IMG/VR virus record: IMGVR_UViG_3300042934_000980
Coordinates: 156,496 to 220,495 of that record
Length of the DNA stretch: 64,000 nt
Strand: one strand, 5' to 3'
Shown: positions 5,774 to 48,386 of the stretch, piece by piece
Layout: every line of letters begins with the position of its first letter
Position numbering within the stretch: position 1 is the first letter of the stretch
Position numbers and translations under genes: made by a program
Notes under the pieces: model-generated
Database searches by the model: none
What the model saw: the letters and a program-made list of their open reading frames with translations, nothing else
Told to the model about the DNA's origin: nothing

Positions 5774-5819
5774 GACGTAATCCTTTTACGGTTTTAATAA
5801 GTGGTTATTACTCCCCTGA

Positions 5820-5827
5820 ATAATGTA
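5820..5827 (-). promoter_or_regulatory. variant early promoter (TACATTAT)
   Basis: same flanking GGTCTGAGA context as TATATTAC sites; upstream of 4916..5773. Confidence 0.45.
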
Positions 5828-5945
5828 GGTCTGAGATTCATTTAAATGTAATGCGGCGTTAAATATAATTTGCAGTGTCAGTATTTTTACCCCGATGATT
5901 TTATGTTCCATCCCCCTAAATACCTTTATCAACTGTGGAACTCCT

Positions 5946-14222: not shown

Positions 14223-14432
14223 TTATTCCATTTCTTCCAGTTTCTCTTCCAATTCTTCAAGCAGCTCTTGGAGAGTTTCAGCTTCAACGCCTTCATCAAC
14301 CTCATCACCAAACCAACCCACCCAAATCCCGTTTTGGACGTCGTAGTTCAGTGTGAGGTCAAGTTGGTCGATGTCGCACAGGTCTTGGAGTCGCGAGATC
14401 CGCTCTTCCAAGGTAACGTCGATAACTGGCAT
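14223..14432 (-). CDS. small, very acidic protein
   Basis: 69 aa, 22 D/E vs 3 K/R. Confidence 0.7.
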   Translation of the reverse strand: MPVIDVTLEERISRLQDLCDIDQLDLTLNYDVQNGIWVGWFGDEVDEGVEAETLQELLEELEEKLEEME

Positions 14433-14455
14433 GGTACAGCCCTCGCGATCAGTGA

Positions 14456-15328
14456 TTAACGCGAAGGGGTCAGTTGCACGACGTCTTCAGACACCGTAGT
14501 ACCCGCCAACTCGTCCACCGTGGTGCCGGCCAGGGCTTTCTCAAGCAGCGAGATTTGCTGGGCGCGTTCACGGAAGTTCATGTCAGCAGGGCTGCGCGGG
14601 GTGGCGCGGCGGTCACGGCGTTCGTTGCGTTCGATCACACGCAGCGTCTTGTTGATCTGCGCTTTGGGGTACACGTTCAGGTCATACCCGTACACGTAAC
14701 CACCAACACTGATCATGGCGTCTTGAGGCGCGTCAGGATCGAAGTAAATCCGGCAGGGCATGTCTTCACCCTCAGCGCTGCGAATCGTCGTGACGAGTTC
14801 TACAGGGTCTGGGAAGACTGCTTGCATGATCTTCTCGAAGAAGCTTGTGATGATCATGGCCGTCTTGATGTAGATCCGAGGACCTTTGATCAAGTTGTTG
14901 TACAACAGTTCCAACACCGCTTCACGCATGTTGGTCGAAGCTTCGGGGACGTAAAACGCGAAAGATACATTGCCCCGGACCACGACGTAGTGCGTACGCT
15001 GTGTGCAACCGATGGCGACAAAGCGGAAGTTACCGTTGTCGCCGACGATCATGTTGTACGAAATGATCGGGCCTTCCAGAAACACTTTAACCGCAGGACC
15101 AGGTCCCTCGGGGTTCAGCTTGGGCTTACCGGTGTGGGAAAGAACTTCCAGCACACGTTCCTGGGTTGAATCGATAAACGCCTGATCCAACCCCAAGTCG
15201 GTGATCAATACACCGCCGTTCCCTTCTTCAACGCGGTTGCTGGCTTCCAGCACCACTCTTAACGGACTTTGTGAAAACTTGGGAAGACGATCGTTAAGCT
15301 CGTTGAGATTACTCGACACTGAACTCAT
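14456..15328 (-). CDS. hypothetical protein
   Basis: 290 aa, GGAG SD upstream. Confidence 0.8.
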   Translation of the reverse strand: MSSVSSNLNELNDRLPKFSQSPLRVVLEASNRVEEGNGGVLITDLGLDQAFIDSTQERVLEVLSHTGKPKLNPEGPGPAVKVFLEGPIISYNMIVGDNGNFRFVAIGCTQRTHYVVVRGNVSFAFYVPEASTNMREAVLELLYNNLIKGPRIYIKTAMIITSFFEKIMQAVFPDPVELVTTIRSAEGEDMPCRIYFDPDAPQDAMISVGGYVYGYDLNVYPKAQINKTLRVIERNERRDRRATPRSPADMNFRERAQQISLLEKALAGTTVDELAGTTVSEDVVQLTPSR

Positions 15329-20080: not shown

Positions 20081-20178
20081 GGTACGTGTATCCTGTTATA
20101 AGAGCGGTGGAGTTGCTATAAGTACATGTTTGAGTTATTTAAAGTTAGAAGGTCTAGAAGAGGTCTTGACACAGTGTA

Positions 20179-20186
20179 GTAATATA
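20179..20186 (-). promoter_or_regulatory. early promoter core TATATTAC
   Basis: exact motif, intergenic. Confidence 0.7.
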
Positions 20187-20231
20187 GGTTTCAGATTGGC
20201 CAAGACCTCCCCTTATTAGGACGTCTTTACC

Positions 20232-22119: not shown

Positions 22120-23841
22120 TTAGTGCGTCTTGACCGCGTGCAGCTTGTCGCCCAACAGCAGGCTGCTGGCATTGGCCAAGATCTTGGCTGTTTGCAGGCC
22201 GCCCTTAAGCGCTGTGACCAACGCGAACGCAGTGTCGTACACACCCAGGTCTTGAGCTTGTCCCGTTTCACCGGTGGCCAAGTTGGTGATGTCCGGTACA
22301 TTACCTGCGTACTTTTTGAGCAGCTCTGGCAGGTCAGGTATGTACGCACCCTCGTCGCTTTGCTTGGCCAGATGCACGTACGGCACGCACACCAGCTCGG
22401 CTAGGCGTTCGAGGATCTTTGCATCCGTCTTGTCCCGGGCGAAGGTCACCGGATACAGGCTTTCCTTATTCTTGGGGGCAAGGACCACATGGTCTTGGTG
22501 ATGGCAGTGATCATAAAGATCCGACAACACCAACAATCCAGCCTTCATCAACGAGGTACCGGCGCCTGGCAGAATGCCGTTGTCCAACGCACTCTTGACC
22601 GCCTTGACGACGTCCTCGAACCGATCCAAACGCTCCTTCACGTCCGAATAGGTTTCACCGCCCACAAAGATGGTGACCAACTGGCCGCGCAGGTTACGGA
22701 TCCGGCTTTCGTTGAACTTGGCGCGTACGCTGAAACGGTCACCCATTTCGTACCCGCTCAGTTCTTGCTCGATGGCATCAGCACGCTGCTGCACGCGCAC
22801 TAAGGCATTAGCATCCAGCTCGCTCACCAACGAGCGGCTGTTGCCGACCGTGACGTGCATGTTCGGAACGTTGAACTCCGCACCCACCGCGTCTTGCAGC
22901 TGAGTGAACATCGGCACGCCAAAGATGGTGGCGATATCACCCATGATCAAGCTGCCCACCGAACCACCGGCGTTGGTGTTGATCCCCACGAAAGTTGGGC
23001 CGCCCAGGAAGGTGTTGACCATTCCACCCATGCGTGCACTGGATTTTACTTGGTTATTGATGTTGGCCATGACAGCCCCCACCTCATGCTCGATCGAGCG
23101 GGCAATGATAAGGATGTGGTCGGTCTGGCCCTTGAACTGGTCATGCAGCTTGATCAGCTCATCGGTCAGGTCCGCACCACGCCCCAGCGTACCGTCGATC
23201 ACCACCGGGATGAAGTTTTCCAGCAAAGTGTCGGCACCGTTGCCGTACTTGCTAAAGCCTGGGTTACTGAAACTCATGTTCAGTGGCAGGCCGTTGCTGT
23301 GCACCACCTTGTCTTCGCTGCTCTGGCCTTCCTTGAGCTCGATGGCAGGGTAACGATCACCCGACTGCTTGTAGATGTCGGTGATGATGGTCGACAGCTC
23401 GTGGTCGCTGTTGGAGGAGGTCAGGGCCAGCTTGAACAACCGATCGTCTTCCGGGGTAACCTGGATGGCGAGGCTGCGCAGCTTCTTGCCGATCTCACCG
23501 ATCACTTGCTCGATGAAACGCTGTTCACGAAAGCTCTTGAACTGGCTGAGCACGCTGTACAGTTCAGCGGTCAACATGACGGTGGTGGTGGTGCCATCGC
23601 CACACTCGTGGTCGGTCTTGATCGCCGCTTCAACGATCACCCGGTTAATGACCTCATCACGCGGGTCATCGAACTTGATGGACTTGGCGACCGTCACGCC
23701 ATCCTTGGTGACCTTAACCGAGGTGCCGGTGCCGATCAAAGCGAGTTTGCCATTGGGACCCATGGTGGCCACAACTGCTTGGTGTACCTTGGTCATGACG
23801 TCTTTGACCATGTCCTGGGTGTTATCCAAAGTCAGCAGCAT
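22120..23841 (-). CDS. groEL: GroEL-like phage chaperonin (EL gp146 type)
   Basis: TMGPNG, VTKDGVTVAKSI, GDGTTT, VGGETYSDVKERLDRFEDVVKAVKSALDNGILPG; no GGM tail; no GroES gene adjacent. Confidence 0.95.
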   Translation of the reverse strand: MLLTLDNTQDMVKDVMTKVHQAVVATMGPNGKLALIGTGTSVKVTKDGVTVAKSIKFDDPRDEVINRVIVEAAIKTDHECGDGTTTTVMLTAELYSVLSQFKSFREQRFIEQVIGEIGKKLRSLAIQVTPEDDRLFKLALTSSNSDHELSTIITDIYKQSGDRYPAIELKEGQSSEDKVVHSNGLPLNMSFSNPGFSKYGNGADTLLENFIPVVIDGTLGRGADLTDELIKLHDQFKGQTDHILIIARSIEHEVGAVMANINNQVKSSARMGGMVNTFLGGPTFVGINTNAGGSVGSLIMGDIATIFGVPMFTQLQDAVGAEFNVPNMHVTVGNSRSLVSELDANALVRVQQRADAIEQELSGYEMGDRFSVRAKFNESRIRNLRGQLVTIFVGGETYSDVKERLDRFEDVVKAVKSALDNGILPGAGTSLMKAGLLVLSDLYDHCHHQDHVVLAPKNKESLYPVTFARDKTDAKILERLAELVCVPYVHLAKQSDEGAYIPDLPELLKKYAGNVPDITNLATGETGQAQDLGVYDTAFALVTALKGGLQTAKILANASSLLLGDKLHAVKTH

Positions 23842-23895
23842 TTACGTGTTCTCCGTACAAGTTTAAAAAGTTAATGGTTGCTGTGCTACGGGTAA

Positions 23896-23903
23896 GTAAT
23901 ATA
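23896..23903 (-). promoter_or_regulatory. early promoter core TATATTAC
   Basis: exact motif about 55 nt upstream of chaperonin. Confidence 0.7.
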
Positions 23904-23998
23904 GGTTTCAGATTTGCTTACAAAAAACAAAATGGCGGCATAGAGGTTAGGGACCTCCCCTCAAGCCTGTTGGCCCGACTAAAGGGGAGGGTGTTGCT

Positions 23999-27616: not shown

Positions 27617-27663
27617 TGATCCTCCTGGATCTACTACTTATCGGCTATTGCCTATACCCCCTG

Positions 27664-27671
27664 GTAATATA
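27664..27671 (-). promoter_or_regulatory. early promoter core TATATTAC
   Basis: exact motif, intergenic. Confidence 0.7.
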
Positions 27672-27691
27672 GGTTTGAAAACAACTGTAAC

Positions 27692-36232: not shown

Positions 36233-36607
36233 TTACATCCTTTTCAAAGCAGCCGCCAATTGCATGGCTTCTTCTGGGGTGAGGTGGTCACGGCGTGCAA
36301 CGTCCAACACCCACGCTAAGGAGATGTAATCGGTGCCGGCTACGTACATGCTAGGAGGCCTGGGTGGGAGTGTTACCCGTTGGGTAAGCAGCTCCTCACG
36401 GATGCGGTTACGTAGTTCGACGGCAACGCTTACAACGTCGTAGTTGGGGCGTTTGAGGCTGTAGGGACGGCCGCTGTCACGTCCAAACACTTGGATGTGG
36501 CTAAACCAGCTGGTCCACTCAATCGGCACCCCGGTGTCCTTGTCCGAGAATACCGACGGCTCATCCGCAGAAGGGGTATAAACAGTGAGGGGATCTTCTG
36601 GGTTCAT
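36233..36607 (-). CDS. EPSxF-WxxW family protein
   Basis: YTPSADEPSVF..IEWTSWF and SLAWVLD. Confidence 0.75.
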   Translation of the reverse strand: MNPEDPLTVYTPSADEPSVFSDKDTGVPIEWTSWFSHIQVFGRDSGRPYSLKRPNYDVVSVAVELRNRIREELLTQRVTLPPRPPSMYVAGTDYISLAWVLDVARRDHLTPEEAMQLAAALKRM

Positions 36608-37140
36608 TTGGTCTCCTTACCCGGATCGTGGTATTTGATTTTAACCAGGTACATGTCACTTGGGTCGATGGGCAAGATCTCAACGTTCATGCGCATCTTT
36701 TCCTGGAATTCTCGGTCCATCATTTGACTTGCTCCTGCCAACCATGCCAAGTCAAAGTCGGTACAACCGTGCTGGTGCTGGTACCATTTCACCCATTCAG
36801 GGTTCAGGTAACGTTTCTCCCAAGGTTGGGTCAGGGAGGGTTCTGGCATCAGGCTAACAGAGGTGTTTTCCATCGGGGGTGAGTCCTTGACGTTGTTCAC
36901 CACAAGCCTTGGGCGTAACTGGGCTTGCAGTTCTTTGATCAGTTGTTCGGTATTGAGGCGCGAGGCCGGTGCAGCCTTTTTGACCACCTGCAGTGGTTGA
37001 GGGTGGGCAAAGGGCTGGCTTAAAAAGTCTGCCACAGGGTCATGGGTTACGGGCTTGGGTCCTGCACTGATTACGTCTTTAATACGCTTTAGAAAGGCTT
37101 TTAGCATGCCAACCTCACAAAAATAAATAACCCGATTCAC
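36604..37140 (-). CDS. protein with partial EPS-WxxW motif
   Basis: PEPSL..LNPEWVKWY. Confidence 0.7.
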   Translation of the reverse strand: MNRVIYFCEVGMLKAFLKRIKDVISAGPKPVTHDPVADFLSQPFAHPQPLQVVKKAAPASRLNTEQLIKELQAQLRPRLVVNNVKDSPPMENTSVSLMPEPSLTQPWEKRYLNPEWVKWYQHQHGCTDFDLAWLAGASQMMDREFQEKMRMNVEILPIDPSDMYLVKIKYHDPGKETK

Positions 37141-37153
37141 CCCAAGGTATAAA

Positions 37154-37184
37154 CTAACCAGTAGGGAAAACCCCTACTGGTTAG
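37154..37184 (-). terminator. terminator hairpin
   Basis: 13-bp stem CTAACCAGTAGGG/CCCTACTGGTTAG. Confidence 0.75.
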
Positions 37185-37192
37185 CTCAACAC

Positions 37193-37666
37193 TTACGCTT
37201 TCAGAGGCATTGGAACGAGCTCTTCATGCAGCTCACCTGTGGTGTATTCAAAACCCGGCGTACCGGCTTGCAAAGACACCAAGTCATACCCGACGGTATA
37301 GGCTTCGGTAAAGCTTACGTTGTGTTTGTGCTTGTAGTGAAGAACAAACGCCATGGAGACCAGGGCCACATCTTTCAACATGGCTTGTGGTTCAGGGGCG
37401 TTCGGGTCAATGTAACGGCGCGGTTCGCGCTCCAGGTGGTCATACAGGGCGTTGCCGATGTTGGACGCCATCTGGTGGCTGAGGGCGAACTTGTTCATGA
37501 ACCAGTTGACCCAGCGAGGATGCAACACGCCCTCACCGCGGGTGAACATGCTAGGCTCAGTTGCCTCAGGTTGATAAGCTGTTTTGAACACAGGGTCTTG
37601 GTGCAGGTTTTCGTACGCCTTCGCCATTACGACTGGGTGTGCTACTACGTTGTGTTGGTTGATCAC
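37193..37666 (-). CDS. EPSxF-WxxW family protein
   Basis: YQPEATEPSMF..HPRWVNWF and SMAFVLH; GTG start with GAGG SD. Confidence 0.75.
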   Translation of the reverse strand: MINQHNVVAHPVVMAKAYENLHQDPVFKTAYQPEATEPSMFTRGEGVLHPRWVNWFMNKFALSHQMASNIGNALYDHLEREPRRYIDPNAPEPQAMLKDVALVSMAFVLHYKHKHNVSFTEAYTVGYDLVSLQAGTPGFEYTTGELHEELVPMPLKA

Positions 37667-38090: not shown

Positions 38091-39665
38091 TTACAGCCCG
38101 GCCGCTGCGCCTTTGATACCGAACGCAGCTGTTGCTGGCATGGCTGGAACTGGGAGCGACGGCACGTCAGCAGCAGAGCCTTCAACGCCTTGACCGGCGC
38201 CAACGACTTTGCCTTCGATGAACCGACCGGCTTTGGAGCCCAGAGCACCGACTGCCATACCCAGCATGCCTGCCGCCACATAGCGACCGAACTGGCCTTC
38301 GATGTGCTTGTCGGTTTGCTCGGCCAGGAAGAAGGATGCACCCGCACCCACCAGCGTACCGACACCGGCGCCGACGGTGATCTGACCGGCATGGCCCATT
38401 TCCAGAGCACCGCCGACCAACGCCGAACCGACCGCTACCCAGCTCGACCGCACGCCTTCGTCACGATCACCCATGATCGAGTAACGCGACTTGGGTGCAG
38501 TGCTGCCGCCGCTGCTGCCCATGGCTTGCTCGGCGATCTTCTTGGCGATGTCCGGGTGCTTGGCCAGAATCCACAGGGTGAAGGTTTCTTCCAGCTCGCT
38601 GTTGCTTTCGCACGCCTTGAAGAAGGTTTCGTCAACCGACAGGGTGTCAGGCTGTGCGCTCACAGTTTCCTGGAACTTGGGGTGCAGCTTGATGAACTCT
38701 TGGAACAGTTCACCGCGGGCTTTGTCGCTGTCGTAGCCGAACACAACCAGGCCGGCGACGAAAGACATTACGTTTTCAGTTTTCATGGAAGTGGCCTTTT
38801 CAGAAGTGTTGGTTTCGGTGGAAGTGGTGGTGGTTGGGTTGGCGGCGTTGGTGTCTACAGAAGTAGCGTCGCGGAAGTCTTTCAGGTTGTTGTTCATGTC
38901 AGTGTGTTCCAAGGCAGGCGCGGCTACAGCAGGGGCTGGCTGCGCAGTTTCAGTTGGCTGGTTATCAGCGGTTTGGGTGGGTGCTTTGTCGAGCTCGATC
39001 TTGTGCAGGACAACTTCTTTGAAATCTTCACGCAGCTCTTTGGATTGAGTGCGCAGGAAGGTAAAGAACTTGTCATCGGTGTTGGAGCTGCGCATCTGTT
39101 GCTGAACCGTCAAGAACTGAGCGAGGACCTCTTTGCTCTGCGCGGCCATCCAGATGCTGTAGATGCTAGCCCGGCGGTCTTCGTCGTACTCGCCAAACCC
39201 TGCTGCAAACAGGGTATTGACAAAGTCCAACATTTCCTGGTCACTGATCTCGTGAACTGCACCGCCCACGATTGAGGACTTCAGTTGATCTTCCTTGATC
39301 ACATGCTCGATGACATGGGCCACGTCATCACCGCCTTTGGCACCGGCTTGAATCTCCACGCTGCCGTGCAGTTCATCGACCGGGATCAGGGACGGCTCTT
39401 TATGTTCCTGTGTCACGCTGCGCAGCAACGCCGGGTTGGCCTTACGCACTTGGTTCATGGTGAAGGTGGTTTTGAAGGCGGCGTTAACATCGCGCAGCAA
39501 AGCCTGCCGATCGTTTTTGGCGATCAGGCTTTCGTCGTACATCTTGGAGCGGAATACTGCAAGCAGCATGTCCTGCTCGCCACCTGCAGCTTTGGCAGCT
39601 TCGATAGCCTTGATGGTTTCATCAGCGGCGTCGTGGAAGTTTGGCAGGTCTTTTTTAGTGGTCAT
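38091..39665 (-). CDS. large protein with C-terminal glycine-zipper membrane segments
   Basis: 524 aa; T/A-rich linker; GxxxG repeats in VAVGSALVGGA..GAGVGTLVGAGA..AAGMLGMAVGALG. Confidence 0.8.
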   Translation of the reverse strand: MTTKKDLPNFHDAADETIKAIEAAKAAGGEQDMLLAVFRSKMYDESLIAKNDRQALLRDVNAAFKTTFTMNQVRKANPALLRSVTQEHKEPSLIPVDELHGSVEIQAGAKGGDDVAHVIEHVIKEDQLKSSIVGGAVHEISDQEMLDFVNTLFAAGFGEYDEDRRASIYSIWMAAQSKEVLAQFLTVQQQMRSSNTDDKFFTFLRTQSKELREDFKEVVLHKIELDKAPTQTADNQPTETAQPAPAVAAPALEHTDMNNNLKDFRDATSVDTNAANPTTTTSTETNTSEKATSMKTENVMSFVAGLVVFGYDSDKARGELFQEFIKLHPKFQETVSAQPDTLSVDETFFKACESNSELEETFTLWILAKHPDIAKKIAEQAMGSSGGSTAPKSRYSIMGDRDEGVRSSWVAVGSALVGGALEMGHAGQITVGAGVGTLVGAGASFFLAEQTDKHIEGQFGRYVAAGMLGMAVGALGSKAGRFIEGKVVGAGQGVEGSAADVPSLPVPAMPATAAFGIKGAAAGL

Positions 39666-39732
39666 TTTGACAACTCCGATTTGGTTATTACAACTAAAGG
39701 TTAGAAAGATTTGTGTGCATTACACTACCTGA

Positions 39733-39740
39733 ATAGTACA
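39733..39740 (-). promoter_or_regulatory. variant early promoter (TGTACTAT)
   Basis: same flanking GGTTTGAAA and CTGTAA elements as TATATTAC sites. Confidence 0.5.
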
Positions 39741-39781
39741 GGTTTGAAAGAAACTGTAAGTTAAAAATAAAAGAACAAACA

Positions 39782-39821
39782 TAAACCCCTACCCCACCGT
39801 TATGGTTGGGGTAGGGGTTTA
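39782..39821 (-). terminator. terminator hairpin
   Basis: 15-bp stem TAAACCCCTACCCCA/TGGGGTAGGGGTTTA. Confidence 0.8.
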
Positions 39822-39824
39822 GTC

Positions 39825-40169
39825 TTAAGCAGGTTGAGAAGTAACGTGTACTGCTGGATGGTCTTTGCGCGCTACCAGCAACATCTCAGCGCCCAAGGAC
39901 AGCAAGTGCTGAGGAGCAACGCCTGCCACCTTGCTGATCATGGTGGTGCCGTTCTCATGGTGGTAACGCGACAGGTCTTCGCCCAACACGATCCAGACAC
40001 CGGTGTTCAGGCCTTCAAACAATCCTTGGGTTTCCCCGTCGTTGAAGTGCGCCGCTTCACCCGGGGCAACATAGGCAAGCAGGGTGACCTGTTTACCGAT
40101 GTTCTCTTTGACCTTGAAAGCGCCCATGATGATCGCCCGCGCCCCTGGAAATAAATTAGATGCTCTCAT
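39825..40169 (-). CDS. hypothetical protein
   Basis: 114 aa, ATGA overlap with 2H gene. Confidence 0.7.
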   Translation of the reverse strand: MRASNLFPGARAIIMGAFKVKENIGKQVTLLAYVAPGEAAHFNDGETQGLFEGLNTGVWIVLGEDLSRYHHENGTTMISKVAGVAPQHLLSLGAEMLLVARKDHPAVHVTSQPA

Positions 40170-40606
40170 ACTTTACCCAGTCCGTATGCTTGGTTGGTGA
40201 AGGTCAACGCACGACCCGCCCAACCAGCCAGAGCCGACTTGAGTTTGAGGATGTCGTAATCGTTGAAGTCGTACGTCAGTGACATGTGTGGTAGGTACCC
40301 GTCGTAAGGACTTTGGTACCCCGCCTCGCGCAAACGCCGGTGTTCTTCTTGCAGTTCTTTGCTGGTCAGGTGAAAGACCAGCCCATCGCCCAGCACATCG
40401 ATCGACACCACGTACGCGGTAAACACCCGCTTAGGATCAAGCTCGGTAAAGGGCTTATCGATCTCACGCTTGCGCTTGTCGTACATCACGGTGCAGTGAA
40501 AGTCGTGGGTGGGCGCAGGGGGAATCCCAGCAGCCATCACGGCGGCCATCAGTTCGGCTTCGATGTCGTCGGTGAGTTCGACGCTGATGTAATGATAATC
40601 GGGCAT
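40166..40606 (-). CDS. 2H phosphoesterase, Acb1/T4 gp57B-like anti-CBASS nuclease candidate
   Basis: two HxT/S motifs FHCTVMY and YLPHMSLTY, spaced as in T4 57B (IHSTICY, YTPHITLSY); 146 aa. Confidence 0.75.
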   Translation of the reverse strand: MPDYHYISVELTDDIEAELMAAVMAAGIPPAPTHDFHCTVMYDKRKREIDKPFTELDPKRVFTAYVVSIDVLGDGLVFHLTSKELQEEHRRLREAGYQSPYDGYLPHMSLTYDFNDYDILKLKSALAGWAGRALTFTNQAYGLGKV

Positions 40607-40615
40607 AACGGTGTC

Positions 40616-41458
40616 CTAGTGACTGTTGAGTTCGACGTGGGAGAGGGGGAAACGAGGGTCGTCGAATTTCAGCTTGAAGCCCGATGCGTTCTTGTGTCCG
40701 CCGCCGCCAAAGGCTTCGGCTACCAGGTTCACGTGCTGGCCGCCGTCTTTACGGCTGCGCAAGGAGAACTGGCGTTCATCCACCCCGTCGTTATAGATAA
40801 CGGCGTAATCATTGTCCTGAGCCAGCAGGTGGCCGATCTCAGAGGCGTACATGTAAGGAGCGTTGACCACCGGCACATCTTGTCCATTGATCTTCATGCG
40901 TCGTACATTGGGCATGAACTTACCGATGTCGCTCTTTTCTTTGCGGATCAACAAAATGCCTTCTGAGATCAGTTCCATCTCAGGGCGCTTCATGATCTCG
41001 GAGAACGTCTCCAAGGACAGCGGGTAGCTGAAGGCCCCCATGGTCCAAGGTTTGGTGTTCTCCAATTTGAACTGGAACAGGTCGCGGTCCTGTACGTACA
41101 ACAGCTGCACAGGAGGGCGCTCAGAGCCAAAGAAGTAGTTCCAGGTCACCATCGCACCAGAGTGCGCTTGATCGATCTCAAACAGGCCTTCCAGGTCCTT
41201 AGCGGCGGTCTCATGGTGGTCCAAGATCACCACGTTGTTGTGCTGCATCAATTGCACAATCTGGTCGCGCTTGTAGCTGAAGTCGACCAAGTAGATGGTG
41301 CAACCGGTCAGTCCCTCAGGAACAGGGTGACCGTATTGTGCTGCGTGGAACTCCACCACGCCTGGGCCAAAGAATTGCTCAACCACCCAGGCAGAGGCGG
41401 CGCCGTCCAGGCAGTTAGCGTGGTAGATACATACCACACGATTATTTTCCTGAGTCAT
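40616..41458 (-). CDS. DHH/DHHA1 phosphoesterase
   Basis: YHANCLDG, LVDFS, ILDHHET, QDRDL, FSLRS, GGGGHKNASGF. Confidence 0.9.
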   Translation of the reverse strand: MTQENNRVVCIYHANCLDGAASAWVVEQFFGPGVVEFHAAQYGHPVPEGLTGCTIYLVDFSYKRDQIVQLMQHNNVVILDHHETAAKDLEGLFEIDQAHSGAMVTWNYFFGSERPPVQLLYVQDRDLFQFKLENTKPWTMGAFSYPLSLETFSEIMKRPEMELISEGILLIRKEKSDIGKFMPNVRRMKINGQDVPVVNAPYMYASEIGHLLAQDNDYAVIYNDGVDERQFSLRSRKDGGQHVNLVAEAFGGGGHKNASGFKLKFDDPRFPLSHVELNSH

Positions 41459-43486: not shown

Positions 43487-43966
43487 TCAGACCCTCGTGT
43501 ATTCGATGTCGTGGACTTCGGGTTTGGCGGCGGCCTCTTTGGCCAGCCGGTCCGCTTCCTCGTTCTCCGGAATACCGGAGTGCGCCTTCACCTTGATGAA
43601 CTTAACCTTGTTTGCCCGCAGCAACTCGTTGAGGATCATCCACAGGTCTTTGTTCTTGACCATGGCACCGTCGCGGGTTAGCCAGTCATTGCGGTACCAG
43701 TTCTTCACCCACTTGGTAGACCCGTCAATGGTGTACTGGGAGTCCGTGTAGATATTGATCCGGGCGTTAGGACCAAACTCTTCGAGTGTGGCAATCACCG
43801 CCATCATTTCCATGCGGTTGTTGGTGGTCAGGAAATAGCCTTTTGAGAGTGTGACCTTAGTGTCTCCGCATCTCACTATCGCCGCATAACCACCAGGTCC
43901 TGGGTTACCGAGGGCACTGCCGTCGGTATGGACTTCATACACGATCGGTTCTTTCTTTTTCGTCAT
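43487..43966 (-). CDS. rnhA: ribonuclease HI
   Basis: TDGSALGNPGPGG, TNNRME, YTDSQY, VKNKDLW, KVKAHSG.PENEEADRLA; TAATG overlap sets start. Confidence 0.95.
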   Translation of the reverse strand: MTKKKEPIVYEVHTDGSALGNPGPGGYAAIVRCGDTKVTLSKGYFLTTNNRMEMMAVIATLEEFGPNARINIYTDSQYTIDGSTKWVKNWYRNDWLTRDGAMVKNKDLWMILNELLRANKVKFIKVKAHSGIPENEEADRLAKEAAAKPEVHDIEYTRV

Positions 43967-44946
43967 TAGCACACCGCGCTTAGTCGTAGATATTCTCTAG
44001 TGTTGATTTGTTTGATTACTTTAAGCCTGGACTGAATGCACTCTTCCACGTACTCAAGGATGGAGTCCAAGTGTTGTTCGCCCTTGATCTTGAGCTGATG
44101 GGTCAACCAATCATCAAATGCACCGGCTGGGGCGTTATAGGGTACTCCAAGGTCAACGCTGTCTTCAACTGTTACCCAAAAGTTGTCGTCGCTCTGACTG
44201 TCTTTAATCACGACCAAGTTAAAAGAGGGCAAGGTAATGATAAAGTGATCAAACTTGTTTCTAAGTTCTACATTCGGGAAATTACCCGTAAAGTGCTCTA
44301 GTCGGGTTCTTACCAACGTCACGTTGGATCCACTGGCCAGCCAAACATCGTCCAGCGAGGTGCGACCTAAGAAGATAGCCTCTCCAGTTATAGAGACGTC
44401 AGACAGACCGCACTTGATTATCTCAACCGTGCCACCTTCCTTTATATCAATCTGTACATCGAACAGCGTGGAGTCCACCACTACCCCAGGACCGTCTATG
44501 GAGACGCTGTGCGCCCGTACGTCATGGAACTGAATACCTTTGGCAGCTGGATTATTGTACCCCCGAACAGAGGAGAGACGACTGCCGATTACGTCACAGT
44601 CTTCCAGTCTGCAGGCCTCAATATCGGCCGCCCCAAAGAACGTTACGTTAGTCAAGTCCGAGCATTGAACTTTAAGCACACTTTCCAAGACGGGCGGGGC
44701 GCTGGGGTCATTATTGTAGTTTTCTATCACACCTTCCTCAATCCAGCGCTTGATAAAGCTGTCCGACTTCAAGGAGATCGTGCAATCCCCGTTCAGATAG
44801 ATCTTGACAGGATGATCCAAGATCGTTAGGTCATACTGCTCGTTCAGCCCTCGGTTGTACGGCATGTGCAATTCTAAACGCTCTGAGACAGTGGGGGTCA
44901 GTTTAACTCCATCCATCCATACACCCGTTTCTTTGTCGGTTTCCAT
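43966..44946 (-). CDS. beta-helix/pentapeptide-like repeat protein, paralog of 45013..46389
   Basis: 5-residue-periodic S/C/L repeats; C-terminal Y..E...SRLKVI motif; start placed at METDK. Confidence 0.7.
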   Translation of the reverse strand: METDKETGVWMDGVKLTPTVSERLELHMPYNRGLNEQYDLTILDHPVKIYLNGDCTISLKSDSFIKRWIEEGVIENYNNDPSAPPVLESVLKVQCSDLTNVTFFGAADIEACRLEDCDVIGSRLSSVRGYNNPAAKGIQFHDVRAHSVSIDGPGVVVDSTLFDVQIDIKEGGTVEIIKCGLSDVSITGEAIFLGRTSLDDVWLASGSNVTLVRTRLEHFTGNFPNVELRNKFDHFIITLPSFNLVVIKDSQSDDNFWVTVEDSVDLGVPYNAPAGAFDDWLTHQLKIKGEQHLDSILEYVEECIQSRLKVIKQINTREYLRLSAVC

Positions 44947-45012: not shown

Positions 45013-46389
45013 TTAGGCGGAATACATGTCGTCCCACGCGTGGTTTTTTGCACCGACATCACGCACCAATTGCTTGGCTTCGTCGATCAGCTGGATCACC
45101 TTCAGGCGCGACATCACCGACTCGGTCAGGTAGTTGGCAAAACTGCGGGTGATCGAGGTCTCAGCCACCGGGAAGCCTTCTTCGTCGATGGACATGACCC
45201 CTGAGATGACTTTGCGCACCTCCTCAATGGTGCAGTTAAGCTTAAGGCGCTGCAGGTTGTACACCGACGTCCCCAAGTCAAACTCGCGATTAGACGCACG
45301 CACCAGGAACATTTTGCTGGCGGGGGTGTCCAACGACAGGTAGTTGAACTTGTTGAGGATGTGGATGGTCTTGCCCGAGAACATCAGGTTGTTGAACACA
45401 CTGTACTTGATCAGCAGTTCAGCTTCCGAACGCACGGTGCAGCTACCCAAGTTGACGTTCTTAAGCGTCATGCGGGTGCCCGACAGAGTGGTCTTGTCCA
45501 GATAGGACCGACTAGCGCTGGTAAAGCCGCTGGCTTCGATGGTGCAGCGGTTGAACTGGCATTCCAGGTACGAACCTTGGGTGATCATCGAATTGACCAC
45601 CGTGGTGCGTTTGAATTGCGACTCCGACACAGTCGCTCGGGATTTGATCGATTCGATCTTTTTACCGCTTATTTCCCACGGCTTGTCCACTGCGTGGTCG
45701 GCAAAGAGACCGTTATACCCGTACCCGTGAGGCGTTACGACGTCTTCGGTTGCAATCAGCGCGCTGCTATTGAGCAGGTTCTTCTGGGAGATAACGTTGA
45801 TCAACGCCGCTTCCCCCACGACGGTGTCATCGGTGCTCGACGAGTTAACCAGCGCCATTATGCTTTTGCGTGCCGCTACTGAGCCACCTTCGAAACCAAA
45901 TCGGTTACGTCTATTTTCCTTGATGTTGAGTTCCACGCTCGATTCATCGTCGAGCAGGTAGTAGTTTTGGTTAACCCCCACCTTGACGCTGAACAGTTTG
46001 AATTCCCGGTCGCTTACCCGGTAGCCGTGAGTGCCTGGCAGGTGGATGGCCTCGCCCAGTTCTTTGATGTAGATGGAGGTGAGGTCGGTTTTGATGCCGG
46101 TGGCGATCGGTTCGATTTCAACGCCATCAACGGTGACAGTACCCAGCTTACGGTTCATACCACGCCCCGCTGCTTTAAGGATGCGTTCTGCGTTCTGGAT
46201 TTGGCGATCGGTTGGTGAAGCGTCAACAGGCTGGGCTTCTTCAACCTTGTGGGCCGCCCCTGGAAGCTTGATGGAGACAACGGTGTCATCCGGTTCACCG
46301 CCGAAGGCTTGCTTGACCTCAGGTGTTACAACAAGGTCTTTGACTTTGCCCGTGGTCACGGTGGCGGTTTTCTTTTCCGGTTTACTCAT
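45013..46389 (-). CDS. beta-helix/pentapeptide-like repeat protein
   Basis: 458 aa; repeats SQFKRTTVVNSMITQ..CQFNRCTIEAS; NKF and SRLKVI motifs shared with next gene. Confidence 0.7.
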   Translation of the reverse strand: MSKPEKKTATVTTGKVKDLVVTPEVKQAFGGEPDDTVVSIKLPGAAHKVEEAQPVDASPTDRQIQNAERILKAAGRGMNRKLGTVTVDGVEIEPIATGIKTDLTSIYIKELGEAIHLPGTHGYRVSDREFKLFSVKVGVNQNYYLLDDESSVELNIKENRRNRFGFEGGSVAARKSIMALVNSSSTDDTVVGEAALINVISQKNLLNSSALIATEDVVTPHGYGYNGLFADHAVDKPWEISGKKIESIKSRATVSESQFKRTTVVNSMITQGSYLECQFNRCTIEASGFTSASRSYLDKTTLSGTRMTLKNVNLGSCTVRSEAELLIKYSVFNNLMFSGKTIHILNKFNYLSLDTPASKMFLVRASNREFDLGTSVYNLQRLKLNCTIEEVRKVISGVMSIDEEGFPVAETSITRSFANYLTESVMSRLKVIQLIDEAKQLVRDVGAKNHAWDDMYSA

Positions 46390-48386
46390 TGTACTGCCCC
46401 TGTTTTGAGAATGGTGATGAGAGCGTCAATGCTCGATGCATCGGTTGCGTTGATCGTAGGAATACTGAGCTCGGTAGCCTTAAGTACTTTGCTCTGCCCC
46501 GCCTTTTCCCCGATCAACAGGTAGTTACAGTCTTTGGTCAATTTATCAACCAGCTCGATACCATGGTCGGCGAAGTAATCAATCAATTCTTCGCGCGATT
46601 GCCCCAAGGTGCCGGTGATGCACACCTTAAGTTCGTTGCTGGCCGGAACGGTGTAATCGATCTTGAGCAGATTGATCAACCCTACCGCATTGGTGACAAA
46701 GTCTTGGCTTTCAAAGCTTAGACTGATCGGGATGGCAATGCCTGCCGAAATCCCGGGAACCTTTTGCAGTTCTTGCGGTTTAGCCAGCCAGTCCAGCAAA
46801 CGCTGACCTTCGTGGTTTTGCTGCACCTGTTCCCACTTGGGGATGTGCGCTGCCAGTTTCTTGGCTCGCACCAAGTCCACGTTAGGTAAGCCCAACGCTT
46901 TGATCACCACATGCACCGGGACCGGGTTGTTCTTGATCGCTTGGATGCGCTCGTAAACTTTCTCCGGCACGGCGGTGAATGGCAGCAGTAAGACGTCCAT
47001 CGGGTATTGGATAAACTTGTTTTCCACCAACGCCGCCAACGTCACCGGACCCAGCCCGTCAATGTCCAACGTGCGCTTGTGCACCAGGTTAATGCACCGG
47101 CCGATCAGTTGCGCCGGGCAGTCGGTAAGGTTGGTGCAGATCAGGTCCGCACTTTGTTTACCCACCCGCACTTCCAATACACAGCCGCAGCTTGGGCAAT
47201 CTTCAGGGTGCTTAAGCACCGGGCCTTTACCACCCTCGATCACCCGGTTAAGCCGTGGGATAACGTCCCCGTTGCGGGTAATCCCCACCACCGACCCCTT
47301 ACGCAGCTCCAGCGCAATGAATTGCTTGTAGTTGTCCAGGTTCGCCCGGGTACAGGTCACACCCCCGATGATCACAGGACGGTAGAGAGCCACCGGAATA
47401 ACCCGCCCGGTTGCAGCTGTCGACCACACCACGTCTTCCAGCGTACTGACTTCTTCCACGTCTGGGAACTTGTACGCGATGCCCCAGTTGGGGTACCGGT
47501 TGTTGACCCCCAGCTCTTTTTGCAAGGCAAAGCTGTTGGCCCGCACCACCACCCCGTCCATGGGAACGTTTGGATGCCGTGCATTGTTCTTCATATCGTC
47601 GGGATGACGGATTTGTGGCGGAGCCATGAAGCCTTGGTTGATGCACCACGTGCGCTGCTCTTCATAGGTATCAAACCACACATCACTCATCCAGTAAGCG
47701 GCAAATTGCAACTTACCCATGATGGCTGGGTCTTGGTTATCCGGCAGGGCGCGGATCCAGCCGCTGACCGCGTTACGTGGGGTGGCCTTCTGTTTAACCG
47801 AAGTTTCGTTGTACCGGTGGAAGTCATCCAGCAGGACAAACGCTTCACCACGAATGGCGATGTCCACATCAAACAGTTCGCCGTTGTCACCTTTGAGCGT
47901 ACGGGGGATGTACGCAAAGAGTGGCAAGGCGTGCATGACGTCTTCACCAATCAACCCATCCCCTCGGGTGGCCATGGCTACCAATCTACCGCGGGTGTAG
48001 ACCAGCTCCAACGCCAACCCATCAATCTTGGCGTCTTTGAACAGTTGTTCGTCGGTCAGCTTCTTGCTTTCCTGCCACTTGTCCACCGCTTCCAGCGTCA
48101 GGGCCTTCTTAAGGCTCAGCATGGGGTGATCGAACTTTACCGCGGTCAAACCCTGGTTGGTCGGTTCATGGATCGGCACAGGCTTCTGAGCGGTCTCAAA
48201 CAGCTCGGCAATCTCGGGGTGGTTTTCAGCCAACACCTCAAAACGTTCCACCAGCTCGTCATAGACGTGGTTGGGGACCTCTTGGGTGTCTTTGTTAAAG
48301 TACAGGTCGGCGTGATGAGTGATCTGCCGGTTGAGGTCATGCATTTCCTCGTAGACAGTTTTGTATTCAGGTTTCATGGTGTTCAA
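46386..48386 (-). CDS. ligA: NAD-dependent DNA ligase
   Basis: HPMLSL, KIDG adenylation motif, ATRGDG..GEDV, AYKFP, CPSC/C..C zinc finger, HhH repeats, C-terminal BRCT. Confidence 0.95.
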   Translation of the reverse strand: MNTMKPEYKTVYEEMHDLNRQITHHADLYFNKDTQEVPNHVYDELVERFEVLAENHPEIAELFETAQKPVPIHEPTNQGLTAVKFDHPMLSLKKALTLEAVDKWQESKKLTDEQLFKDAKIDGLALELVYTRGRLVAMATRGDGLIGEDVMHALPLFAYIPRTLKGDNGELFDVDIAIRGEAFVLLDDFHRYNETSVKQKATPRNAVSGWIRALPDNQDPAIMGKLQFAAYWMSDVWFDTYEEQRTWCINQGFMAPPQIRHPDDMKNNARHPNVPMDGVVVRANSFALQKELGVNNRYPNWGIAYKFPDVEEVSTLEDVVWSTAATGRVIPVALYRPVIIGGVTCTRANLDNYKQFIALELRKGSVVGITRNGDVIPRLNRVIEGGKGPVLKHPEDCPSCGCVLEVRVGKQSADLICTNLTDCPAQLIGRCINLVHKRTLDIDGLGPVTLAALVENKFIQYPMDVLLLPFTAVPEKVYERIQAIKNNPVPVHVVIKALGLPNVDLVRAKKLAAHIPKWEQVQQNHEGQRLLDWLAKPQELQKVPGISAGIAIPISLSFESQDFVTNAVGLINLLKIDYTVPASNELKVCITGTLGQSREELIDYFADHGIELVDKLTKDCNYLLIGEKAGQSKVLKATELSIPTINATDASSIDALITILKTGAVQ

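What the first reader, a model, noticed from the sequence alone, without database searches (positions are those of the whole stretch)
39825..41458. Coupled DHH + Acb1-like 2H phosphoesterase operon: possible two-step destruction of immune second messengers
Seen: the DHH/DHHA1 gene, the 2H gene 10 nt later and a 114-aa gene joined by ATGA overlap end at one terminator. Established: Acb1 (T4 gp57B) opens cyclic di- and trinucleotides of CBASS, and DHH/DHHA1 enzymes (NrnA, GdpP, Pde2) degrade linear pNpN and c-di-NMP. Inference: ring opening followed by digestion of the linear product, or a 2',3'-cyclic-phosphate RNA end-healing pair. A nucleus-forming phage is not shielded from abortive signalling systems, so such a module would be useful.
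Basis: partly seen in the sequence, partly recalled or inferred. Interest (0 to 1): 0.65.

Follow-up and report, generated by a model that had tools for sequence, protein, structure and literature searches.

The report
Acb1-like gene beside optional DHH phosphoesterase
An uncultivated relative of the giant Pseudomonas phage EL carries a well-supported member of the Acb1 family (enzymes that destroy bacterial CBASS alarm nucleotides) next to a DHH phosphoesterase, but the DHH gene comes and goes among relatives, so the two look like neighbours at the end of a replication operon, not an obligate two-step pathway.

Summary
On the minus strand lie a 280-aa DHH/DHHA1 gene, a 146-aa 2H gene after a 9-nt spacer, and a 114-aa gene joined by an ATGA overlap. 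All three end at one strong terminator.

The 2H protein is a member of Pfam Acb1 (57.9 bits against a cut-off of 27). Its His-x-Thr / His-x-Ser tetrad is conserved, and its best structural matches are solved phage Acb1 enzymes. It is probably an anti-CBASS phosphodiesterase of a divergent EL-like subfamily.

The two-step idea is not supported:
- The tight trio occurs only in the nearest relatives.
- Five EL-like or RisingSun-like genomes (four of them complete or near-complete IMG/VR records, plus the RisingSun record) keep Acb1 and have no DHH anywhere.
- DHH presence changes at least 4 times on a 12-locus tree.
- Only 3 of 80 DHH-bearing viral loci have Acb1 within 10 kb.
- In Dickeya phage JA11 the two genes lie 61 kb apart.
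- In unrelated phages the DHH gene sits beside ligase, RNase H, SbcCD or DNA polymerase.
- Acb1 leaves 5'-OH/3'-phosphate products, not the pNpN that NrnA-type enzymes are known to take.

The 114-aa protein is the more constant partner of Acb1. Its function is unknown. Overall this is a new member of a known kind, of moderate to low interest.

The parts
40616..41458 (-). DHH/DHHA1 phosphoesterase, 280 aa. Stand-alone two-lobed enzyme of NrnA/NrnB type. An accessory gene in this phage lineage.
   Evidence: phrog_4771 'DHH phosphoesterase' at 3.1e-82. Pfam DHHA1 scores 23.4 bits and DHH 17.1 bits, both below their cut-offs. In 43 homologues D18/G19, D59, D80-H81-H82, D124/D126 and G252-G-G-H255 are invariant, and H13 is conserved in at least 90%. 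The AF2 model has pLDDT 95.8. Foldseek matches: mycobacterial NrnA/Rv2837c, GdpP, TM1595, Pde2, PggH and DhhP at E 1e-12 to 1e-9.
40166..40606 (-). Acb1-family 2H phosphodiesterase, 146 aa. Probable degrader of anti-CBASS cyclic oligonucleotides.
   Evidence: Pfam PF23474 Acb1 at 57.9 bits against a cut-off of 27. H37-x-T39 and H107 are invariant and S109 is conserved in at least 90% across 19 homologues. The AF2 model has pLDDT 89. Best structural matches are phage Acb1 structures: 9q2g (Z 13.9, rmsd 3.0, 142 aligned residues) and 7t26 (Z 11.9). A profile search of the PDB finds only Acb1 chains. dN/dS is 0.10.
39825..40169 (-). p114, a small protein of unknown function, translationally coupled to Acb1 by an ATGA overlap.
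   Evidence: phrog_2529 (unknown function) at 2.3e-8. The family has 48 representatives of about 100-115 aa. It lies immediately 3' of Acb1 in L012, L013, L014, L030 and L031. It has no Pfam or PDB match. dN/dS is 0.52.
39777..39825 (-). Intrinsic terminator hairpin (core stem 39820-39783) followed by a U-rich tail. It ends the transcription unit.
   Evidence: -33.3 kcal/mol, z = -6.16. Relatives carry hairpins at the same place whose sequences differ but remain complementary.
39732..39747 (-). EL-type promoter-like motif TCAAACCTGTACTATT. It starts the next unit (the 524-aa gene at 39665..38091).
   Evidence: It is the only exact match in the window to TCAAACCTNNNNTATT, a pattern I derived from this site together with a promoter annotated in phage EL (TTCTCAAACCTACATTATT), so that match is not an independent test. 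No such motif lies between 39748 and about 46000.
43487..43972 (-). RNase H. It is an upstream member of the same conserved block and an anchor for synteny.
   Evidence: 56-87% identical homologues lie upstream of Acb1 in all EL-like loci that reach that far. The EL orthologue is annotated as RNase H.
46386..48386 (-). NAD-dependent DNA ligase, at the upstream end of the replication-gene block.
   Evidence: Pfam DNA_ligase_aden at 6.4e-38, plus the OB-fold and BRCT domains. EL has the same order: ligase, RNase H, DHH, Acb1.

Best explanation
The window comes from an uncultivated EL-like jumbo phage. The three genes are the last cistrons of a long leftward unit that also carries NAD-dependent DNA ligase and RNase H.

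The 146-aa protein is a divergent member of the Acb1 family. I infer that it acts as a metal-independent 2H phosphodiesterase. Its His37-x-Thr39 / His107-x-Ser109 tetrad would cleave 3'-5' bonds of CBASS cyclic di- and trinucleotides through a 2',3'-cyclic phosphate, leaving inactive linear or 3'-phosphorylated products. That would blunt abortive-infection signalling.

The 280-aa protein is an independent, metal-dependent stand-alone DHH/DHHA1 phosphoesterase of the NrnA/NrnB type. I infer that it belongs functionally with the replication and nucleotide-turnover genes. It would degrade short oligonucleotides, such as RNase H products and nanoRNA from host RNA breakdown, or short ssDNA, down to mononucleotides. 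It is dispensable, because close relatives lack it.

Its adjacency to Acb1 reflects a shared position at the end of this block. Any help it gives Acb1 is optional, not part of an obligate pathway.

The 114-aa protein is the gene most constantly coupled to Acb1 in this sub-clade. Its role is unknown.

Shown: gene structure, family membership, conserved catalytic residues, folds and the synteny pattern. Inferred: all substrates and the biological roles.
For: Acb1 membership:
- Pfam PF23474 at 57.9 bits against 27, compared with 24.1 bits (below cut-off) for the generic 2_5_RNA_ligase2 family.
- All 26 homologues carry PF23474.
- The tetrad is invariant or nearly so.
- Acb1 structures are the top structural and profile matches.
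- Hobbs et al. found that T4 Acb1 and the nine further homologues they cloned all cleaved 3'3'-cGAMP and cAAA (PMC9117128).

DHH is an intact enzyme.

DHH is facultative:
- It is absent from the whole genome in L004, L005, L008, L010 and RisingSun, all of which keep Acb1.
- Its presence changes at least 4 times on the Acb1+RNase H tree of 12 loci.
- The spacing between DHH and Acb1 runs from 9 nt to 1.2 kb, with up to four intervening genes.

The DHH family is large and mostly free of Acb1:
- 4395 proteins match in the word-index search, and source annotations name some of them 'oligoribonuclease NrnB'.
- At least 578 IMG/VR contigs encode a relative. Of the best 80, only 3 have Acb1 within 10 kb, and all 3 are EL-like.
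- In Dickeya phage JA11, which has both genes, they lie 61 kb apart.

DHH recurs in a replication or repair context in unrelated phages:
- next to NAD ligase in Serratia phage 2050HW;
- between SbcC and SbcD in PaBG;
- beside DNA polymerase and a helicase in JA11;
- near a dNMP phosphatase and RNase H in Caulobacter phage Karma;
- near dNMP kinase and a DNA methylase in mid-sized viral contigs.

No promoter motif separates the trio from RNase H and ligase.
Against: - No activity was measured for any of the three proteins.
- This Acb1 subfamily is only 15-20% identical to the crystallised enzymes. By sequence its C-terminal quarter does not align with the lid that holds the bases, so substrate range may differ.
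- The second motif is His-x-Ser, not His-x-Thr.
- In the window's own sub-clade the DHH and Acb1 genes are tightly packed (7-41 nt apart in four contigs). Both are under strong purifying selection. This is what a functional pair would also look like.
- DHH/DHHA1 enzymes that degrade immune or signalling nucleotides do exist: GdpP, CdnP, the archaeal membrane-associated enzyme that degrades cOA, and mimivirus R106 acting on 3'3'-cGAMP (bioRxiv 10.64898/2026.07.21.739742). An anti-defence role for the DHH protein is therefore not excluded.
- The 'replication neighbourhood' evidence rests on annotation as deposited and on a handful of lineages.
Confidence: 0.55

Rival explanations
1. Parallel anti-signalling cassette. 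The DHH protein is itself an anti-defence phosphodiesterase. It would cover signals that Acb1 cannot cut, such as c-di-GMP, cUU, cA4/cA6 of type III CRISPR, or c-di-AMP. Together the two enzymes would widen the range of second messengers destroyed without acting in sequence.
For: - Acb1 does not cleave cGG, 3'3'-cUU, 3'2'-cGAMP or cA4 (PMC9117128).
- DHH/DHHA1 enzymes cleave c-di-AMP, c-di-GMP, cGAMP and cOA. Fold matches include GdpP and Rv2837c/CdnP. The membrane-associated DHH-DHHA1 degrader of cOA is cited in PMC7824862 and PMC7841402.
- A 2026 preprint reports that mimivirus R106, and possibly one phage DHH protein, abolish 3'3'-cGAMP signalling.
- Iyer et al. 2021 already proposed that jumbo-phage DHH phosphodiesterases counter CBASS and type III signals.
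- The two genes are tightly packed in this sub-clade.
Against: - The DHH family is found overwhelmingly without Acb1 and in replication or repair contexts.
- Gain and loss of DHH is uncorrelated with Acb1.
- The fold and motifs cannot separate a nanoRNase from a cyclic-dinucleotide phosphodiesterase.
- In the preprint most viral DHH proteins tested were not reported as active, and the one phage candidate had an ambiguous control.
Confidence: 0.2
2. Acb1 opens the ring and the DHH enzyme digests the linear product. This would either complete the destruction or relieve product inhibition of Acb1.
For: - Cellular precedent exists for a two-step route with product feedback. GdpP makes pApA, which Pde2/NrnA removes, and pApA accumulation inhibits GdpP. 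The same holds for pGpG and Orn (PMC9779919).
- The spacing of 9 nt and the shared terminator are conserved in the nearest relatives.
- NrnA-type enzymes also have 3'-phosphatase (pAp) activity (PMC9779919).
Against: - Acb1 products are GpAp or 3'-NMP, with a 5'-OH and a 3'-phosphate. They are already inactive as signals and differ from the pNpN substrates known for NrnA, Pde2 and PggH (PMC9117128).
- cAAA is taken down to mononucleotides by Acb1 alone.
- Five related genomes keep Acb1 without any DHH gene, so the second step cannot be needed.
- Variable spacing and intervening genes separate the two elsewhere.
- The genes are unlinked outside the lineage.
Confidence: 0.1
3. RNA end-healing or 2',3'-cyclic-phosphate pair. 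The 2H protein would be a LigT/CPDase-like 2',3'-cyclic phosphodiesterase acting on cleaved tRNA or mRNA ends or on 2',3'-cNMPs. The DHH protein would remove the resulting phosphate or trim the ends.
For: - The 2H fold is shared with plant CPDase (Z 11.3, close to the FBB1 Acb1 score) and with LigT (Z about 9).
- PHROG and RefSeq label the family 'RNA ligase'.
- Iyer et al. 2021 assigned jumbo-phage 2H enzymes to 2',3'-cyclic phosphate and RNA repair.
Against: - Sequence membership is with Acb1 and not with the LigT-type family, which scores 24.1 bits, below its cut-off of 27.
- Only Acb1 chains match the family profile in the PDB.
- No Rnl2-type RNA ligase and no RtcB was found in the 96%-complete genome. 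The Rnl1-type search was also blank, but its control was uninformative.
Confidence: 0.07

Closest known systems
Acb1 (phage T4 gp57B; Erwinia phage FBB1 Acb1, PDB 7T26/7T27; Burkholderia phage BCSR5 Acb1, PDB 9Q2G/9Q2Y)
   Same: - Similar size: 146 aa against 152-165 aa.
- Same 2H fold.
- Pfam PF23474 score above the cut-off.
- Two catalytic His-x-Thr/Ser motifs at equivalent positions.
- A conserved aromatic residue six positions before the second His (Y101, matching T4 F107).
- A conserved aromatic residue near the C-terminus (Y141).
- Encoded by a phage.
   Different: - Only 15-20% identical.
- The second motif is His-x-Ser.
- Equivalents of W74 and of the adenine-reading E141 are not evident by sequence.
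- The C-terminal 'lid' region does not align in profile searches.
- It is encoded in a jumbo-phage replication block, not a T4-like context.
- No activity has been tested.
Stand-alone DHH/DHHA1 phosphoesterases: NrnA/Pde2, NrnB (COG2404), Rv2837c/CdnP, TM1595, PggH, GdpP catalytic domain
   Same: - Two-lobed DHH + DHHA1 architecture with a linker helix.
- All metal-binding and catalytic motifs are present (DHH, GGGH).
- Similar size class, with no OB-fold or other extra domain.
   Different: - 14-19% identical to every solved member.
- Pfam scores fall below the gathering cut-offs.
- Motif I reads H-x-N-C-x-D-G, not the usual D-x-D.
- It belongs to a phage-rich family (phrog_4771) whose substrate has never been tested.
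Viral DHH phosphodiesterases reported to degrade cGAMP (mimivirus R106 'Euk-DHH-1B'; phage 'Ph-DHH-3B'; bioRxiv 10.64898/2026.07.21.739742)
   Same: - Virus-encoded DHH-DHHA1 enzyme.
- An ordered helix links the two lobes, as described for that paper's groups 4 and 5.
   Different: I could not establish the relationship to the tested proteins, because no sequences were available here. The mimivirus gene was dispensable in its host, and the phage candidate had an ambiguous control.
Pseudomonas phage EL gp125 (DHH) and gp126 (annotated 'RNA ligase')
   Same: - They are orthologues, 40% and 50% identical.
- They keep the same order: ligase, RNase H, DHH, Acb1-like, then the homologue of the 524-aa protein.
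   Different: - In EL the two genes are about 260 bp apart.
- EL has no p114 homologue.
- The EL DHH gene is annotated with a longer N-terminus.

Membership tests
Acb1 (Pfam PF23474, anti-CBASS 2H phosphodiesterase) | Sequence score above the family's curated threshold. | tested here: met
   57.9 bits against a cut-off of 27, E 1.3e-15, covering residues 6-123. The own-genome scan agrees. All 26 homologues carry PF23474.
Acb1 (Pfam PF23474, anti-CBASS 2H phosphodiesterase) | Active-site tetrad of two His-x-Thr motifs (T4 H44/T46 and H113/T115). | tested here: met
   H37-C-T39 and H107-M-S109. H37, T39 and H107 are invariant and S109 is conserved in at least 90% of 19 homologues. Both motifs align with those of 7T26 and 9Q2G. 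Ser replaces Thr in the second motif.
Acb1 (Pfam PF23474, anti-CBASS 2H phosphodiesterase) | 2H fold closest to solved Acb1 structures and not to other 2H enzymes. | tested here: met
   9q2g at Z 13.9, 9q2y at 13.2, 7t26 at 11.9 and 7t27 at 11.6 rank first. Plant CPDase at 11.3 is within 1 Z unit of FBB1 Acb1, and LigT scores about 9.
Acb1 (Pfam PF23474, anti-CBASS 2H phosphodiesterase) | Base-stacking aromatic residues (Y12, W74, F107, W147), adenine-reading E141, and the C-terminal lid. | tested here: inconclusive
   Conserved aromatic residues sit at Y6, Y101 (six before the second His) and Y141. No conserved equivalent of W74 or E141 is seen by sequence. Profile alignments stop near residue 116-123. 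No residue-level structural superposition was available.
Acb1 (Pfam PF23474, anti-CBASS 2H phosphodiesterase) | [quoted passage not shown] | not testable with these tools
   This needs enzyme assays and plaque assays.
DHH/DHHA1 phosphoesterase superfamily (stand-alone NrnA/NrnB type) | DHH motifs I-IV and the DHHA1 GGGH motif. | tested here: met
   D18, D59, D80-H81-H82, D124/D126 and G252-G253-G254-H255 are invariant in 43 homologues, and H13 is conserved in at least 90%.
DHH/DHHA1 phosphoesterase superfamily (stand-alone NrnA/NrnB type) | Sequence score above the Pfam thresholds for DHH (PF01368) and DHHA1 (PF02272). | tested here: not met
   DHHA1 scores 23.4 against 25.9 and DHH scores 17.1 against 28.1. 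phrog_4771 matches at 3e-82, and many homologues carry the Pfam domains. The shortfall therefore reflects divergence and not a different fold.
DHH/DHHA1 phosphoesterase superfamily (stand-alone NrnA/NrnB type) | Two-lobed fold matching solved members. | tested here: met
   The model has pLDDT 95.8. Foldseek probability is 1.00 to NrnA, Rv2837c, GdpP, TM1595, Pde2 and PggH, at E down to 1e-12.
DHH/DHHA1 phosphoesterase superfamily (stand-alone NrnA/NrnB type) | NCBIfam equivalog for NrnA or RecJ. | tested here: not met
   NrnA scores 18.8 bits against 350 and archaeal RecJ scores 13.5 against 360. The protein is not an orthologue of either, and its substrate is open.
   DHH is absent from five genomes that keep Acb1. 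Its presence changes at least 4 times on 12 loci. Only 3 of 80 DHH loci have Acb1 nearby. The two genes are 61 kb apart in JA11.

The most novel reading that the evidence does not exclude
In this EL-like sub-clade DHH, Acb1 and the 114-aa protein would form a dedicated anti-signalling cassette. Acb1 opens adenosine-containing cyclic di- and trinucleotides. The DHH enzyme either destroys signals that Acb1 cannot touch (c-di-GMP, cA4/cA6, c-di-AMP) or clears 3'-phosphorylated products. The fast-evolving, translationally coupled 114-aa protein modulates or extends Acb1, for example as a nucleotide binder or an adaptor. This would be the first multi-enzyme second-messenger degradation module described in a jumbo phage.
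Probability: 0.15. Interest if true: 0.65.

Novelty: new member of a known kind. Interest (0 to 1): 0.35.

Why it matters
Jumbo phages related to phiKZ and EL are exposed to abortive-infection systems that sense infection from the cytoplasm. A type III-C CBASS gives more than 10^5-fold protection against a phiKZ-like phage (PMC10889362).

A 2026 review states that Tad1 is so far the only anti-defence protein described in jumbo phages (PMC13282480). A conserved Acb1-family gene in every EL-like and RisingSun-like genome examined here would add a second, enzymatic anti-CBASS mechanism to this group. It would also correct the legacy 'RNA ligase' and 'structural protein' labels in the databases.

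The negative result is useful too. The attractive two-step reading is not backed by comparative genomics. It should therefore not be propagated as annotation, and the phage DHH family (phrog_4771; at least 578 IMG/VR contigs) remains an open target that is cheap to test.

Tried and rejected
- Megablast of the region against cultured phages found nothing. The phage is known only from an IMG/VR record.
- The word-index search and tblastn against phages for p114 gave nothing beyond the protein itself. The exhaustive profile search found a small family without annotation. A Pfam scan of 30 members and a PDB profile search were both blank. The ESM Atlas gave only unnamed look-alikes below 0.9.
- The predicted complex of Acb1 with p114 scored 0.00. 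The verdict was 'no answer', which is not evidence either way.
No read or expression data were examined, and read laying was not used.
- A Pfam scan of ten 560-690-aa ORFs did not reveal a chimallin. Nuclear-shell status is left untested.
- RNA ligase and RtcB searches of the own genome were blank. The Rnl1 control was uninformative.
- The simple terminator scanner missed the real terminator, so it was verified by folding instead.
- I considered and rejected a RecJ orthologue (no OB-fold, 280 aa, NCBIfam far below cut-off) and an NrnA orthologue (same call).
- No alternative genetic code was needed.
Full report
**What is there**

The window is bases 156496-220495 of a 220,495-bp IMG/VR viral record estimated 96% complete.

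All three reported ORFs lie on the minus strand:
- DHH gene, 41458..40616, 280 aa.
- A 9-nt spacer, with an AGGA that overlaps the DHH stop.
- 2H gene, 40606..40166, 146 aa.
- An ATGA overlap.
- Third gene, 40169..39825, 114 aa ('p114').

A hairpin with a U-rich tail follows directly. It folds at -33.3 kcal/mol, z = -6.2. Sixteen bases of promoter-like sequence come next (39747..39732). They are the window's only exact match to TCAAACCTNNNNTATT, a pattern I built from this site and a promoter annotated in phage EL, so the match is not an independent test. They precede the following 524-aa gene.

No such motif and no strong terminator separates the trio from RNase H (43972..43487) or the NAD-dependent DNA ligase (48386..46386) upstream. 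The trio is therefore best read as the distal end of a long replication-gene unit.

dN/dS against the nearest relative is 0.14 for DHH, 0.10 for the 2H gene and 0.52 for p114.

**Which phage**

No cultured phage matches at the DNA level. At the protein level the nearest cultured relatives are Pseudomonas phage EL and its kin, at 40-50% identity, followed by Erwinia phages RisingSun and Joad.

- The window also encodes a GroEL-like chaperonin, the kind of gene for which phage EL is known (from my own knowledge, not checked here).
- Elsewhere the genome has sub-threshold hits to two RNA polymerase beta-like ORFs and to a tubulin.
- I did not identify a chimallin.
- A published survey places EL in a subcluster with phuZ but no detectable chmA (PMC11448039).

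**The 2H protein**

- It scores 57.9 bits on Pfam Acb1 (cut-off 27). The generic LigT-type family stays below its own cut-off.
- All 26 homologues found in metagenomes carry the same Pfam family.
- In an alignment of 19 of them, H37, T39 and H107 are invariant and S109 is nearly so.
- An AlphaFold model (pLDDT 89) matches solved phage Acb1 enzymes best. The scores are Burkholderia phage BCSR5 Z 13.9 and 13.2, and Erwinia phage FBB1 Z 11.9 and 11.6. Plant CPDase follows at 11.3, penguinpox cGAMP PDE at 9.9 and LigT at about 9.
- A profile of the family finds only Acb1 chains in the PDB.

Hobbs et al. (PMC9117128) showed the following for Acb1:
- It cleaves 3' of adenosine through a 2',3'-cyclic phosphate.
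- It yields GpAp from cGAMP.
- It does not cleave cGG, 3'3'-cUU, 3'2'-cGAMP or cA4.
- T4 Acb1 and the nine further homologues they cloned were all active.

This subfamily is divergent, at 15-20% identity. Profile alignments stop before the C-terminal lid. Equivalents of W74 and E141 are not evident, although aromatic residues matching Y12, F107 and W147 are conserved. I file the protein as an Acb1-family member whose exact substrate range is open.

The RefSeq labels 'RNA ligase' and 'putative structural protein' on its orthologues appear to be legacy names.

**The DHH protein**

- Pfam scores are just below the cut-offs, but phrog_4771 matches at 3e-82.
- D18, D59, DHH 80-82, D124/D126 and GGGH 252-255 are invariant in 43 homologues, and H13 is nearly so.
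- The model (pLDDT 95.8) has the two-lobed fold of stand-alone DHH/DHHA1 enzymes. Matches include mycobacterial NrnA/Rv2837c (CdnP), GdpP, TM1595, Pde2, PggH, DhhP and archaeal RecJ-like proteins, all at 14-19% identity.
- It is not an NrnA or RecJ equivalog.
- The fold cannot tell a nanoRNase from a cyclic-dinucleotide phosphodiesterase.

**Is the pair linked?**

Within the nearest sub-clade, yes. L012, L013, L014 and L030 carry Acb1-p114 followed by a terminator, with the DHH gene 7-41 nt upstream of Acb1 wherever the contig reaches that far (L014 starts at Acb1). Their terminator stems differ in sequence but stay complementary.

Further out, the backbone is RNase H ... p249 ... Acb1 ... p524, and DHH is optional:
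- DHH is present in EL, L007, L009, L011 and L031. The gaps to Acb1 run from 260 bp to 1.2 kb, with up to four genes between.
- DHH is absent from the entire genome in L004, L005, L008, L010 and RisingSun.
- On a tree built from Acb1 plus RNase H for 12 loci, DHH presence changes at least four times. The tree is only partly resolved.

Outside the lineage the two families are essentially independent:
- The DHH family has 4395 word-index hits, and source annotations name some of them NrnB-like.
- It has at least 578 IMG/VR contigs.
- Of the best 80 loci, only three have an Acb1 within 10 kb, and all three are EL-like jumbo phages.
- Dickeya phage JA11 has both genes, 61 kb apart.

In unrelated phages the DHH gene sits in replication or repair contexts:
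- beside NAD ligase in Serratia phage 2050HW;
- between SbcC and SbcD in PaBG;
- beside DNA polymerase and a helicase in JA11;
- near a dNMP phosphatase and RNase H in Caulobacter phage Karma;
- near DUF2303, a C5 methylase and dNMP kinase in mid-sized viral contigs.

**Chemistry**

Ring opening by Acb1 already inactivates the signal, and cAAA is reduced to 3'-AMP by Acb1 alone. The products carry a 5'-OH and a 3'-phosphate, unlike the pNpN that NrnA, Pde2 and PggH are known to take.

A two-step route with product feedback does exist in cells: GdpP with Pde2, and EAL enzymes with Orn (PMC9779919). NrnA also has pAp 3'-phosphatase activity. The sequential idea is therefore possible, but it is not needed and not indicated.

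**The third gene**

p114 belongs to a small family of proteins of about 100 aa, with 48 representatives. The family has no Pfam or PDB match.

- It sits immediately 3' of Acb1 in six contigs.
- It also occurs without Acb1 (L032).
- It occurs as two copies 1.6-2.5 kb from Acb1 in L033.

It is the more constant partner of Acb1 in this sub-clade, and it evolves faster. A predicted-complex job gave no answer.

**Alternatives**

- RNA end-healing is weak. Sequence membership is with Acb1 and not LigT, and no RNA ligase or RtcB was found in the genome.
- A parallel anti-signalling role for DHH remains open. DHH enzymes degrade c-di-AMP, cGAMP and cOA. Mimivirus R106 degrades 3'3'-cGAMP (bioRxiv 10.64898/2026.07.21.739742). 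Iyer et al. 2021 had already suggested that jumbo-phage DHH phosphodiesterases counter CBASS and type III signals, and that jumbo-phage 2H enzymes act on 2',3'-cyclic phosphates (PMC7824862).

**Verdict**

- The Acb1 assignment is supported.
- An obligate two-step operon is not supported.
- Novelty: a new, divergent member of the Acb1 family in EL-like jumbo phages, next to an accessory DHH gene of unknown substrate.
- A 2026 review notes that Tad1 is the only anti-defence protein so far described in jumbo phages (PMC13282480). Showing Acb1 activity here would be a useful but unsurprising addition.

**Limits**

- No reads or expression data were examined.
- No enzyme data exist.
- The neighbourhood evidence relies partly on annotation as deposited.

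Noticed in passing
window 39825-40169 (-); L012:3258-3578, L013:1052-1372, L014:470-790, L030:4001-4303, L031:4001-4297, L032:694-999, L033:13449-13772 and 14306-14638: The 114-aa protein belongs to an uncharacterised family of about 100-aa proteins. The conserved pattern is roughly PG..ALI.GA....ENIGK.V.L ... W.V.G..L ... HL.PL. The family usually sits directly after Acb1 (ATGA overlap or a 2-nt gap). It also occurs alone in a small-phage recombination context and as a double copy. Weak profile hits to repeated stretches in very long proteins suggest a small beta-rich domain.
   Followed up: partly
window 39732-39747 (-); variants at 5819-5834, 20178-20193, 23895-23910, 27663-27678 (all -): Motif TCAAACCTNNNNTATT, or T[CG]AAACCTATATTAC. 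It resembles a promoter annotated in phage EL. It follows the terminator, together with a conserved TTTTTAACTTACAG stretch shared with L012, L013 and L030. With up to 2 mismatches the window holds 9 matches against 3.5 expected, and 2 of 100 shuffles reach 9. It is a candidate phage promoter consensus for this lineage.
   Followed up: partly
window 22120-23841 (-): A 573-aa GroEL-like chaperonin (Pfam Cpn60_TCP1 at 2e-24). Phage EL is known for such a chaperonin (my own knowledge, not checked here).
   Followed up: no
window 38091-39665 (-): A 524-aa protein conserved directly downstream of Acb1 in all EL-like loci and in RisingSun. It has a low-complexity, acidic, Thr/Ala-rich middle and a glycine-rich hydrophobic C-terminal part. 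It has no Pfam family and only a weak hit to phrog_29858. Function unknown.
   Followed up: no
window 36604-37666 (-) and repeated hits in L004, L005, L007, L013, L014: The 157-aa and 178-aa proteins downstream belong to a paralogous family that recurs several times per locus in relatives (multiple tblastn hits per locus).
   Followed up: no
L012:3697-4482: In one close relative a 261-aa gene with a weak HNH_3 hit lies between the p114 homologue and the p524 homologue. It is probably a homing endonuclease. The window has no such gene.
   Followed up: no
public records NC_007623.1 gp126, NC_042018.1 gp120, MF459646.1, PV400809.1: Annotation looks inconsistent across records. Acb1-family orthologues are labelled 'RNA ligase' or 'putative structural protein'. 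The DHH orthologue is labelled 'methyltransferase' in some EL-like records and 'single-stranded-DNA-specific exonuclease' in Brevundimonas and Serratia phages.
   Followed up: partly
genome G000:C1:91262-91687 (-), 66854-67033 (-), 121971-122522 (-): Sub-threshold hits to a tubulin-like ORF (PhuZ-sized, 332-aa open frame) and to two RNA polymerase beta-like ORFs. They are consistent with phiKZ/EL-type biology. No chimallin was identified among ten ORFs of 560-690 aa.
   Followed up: partly
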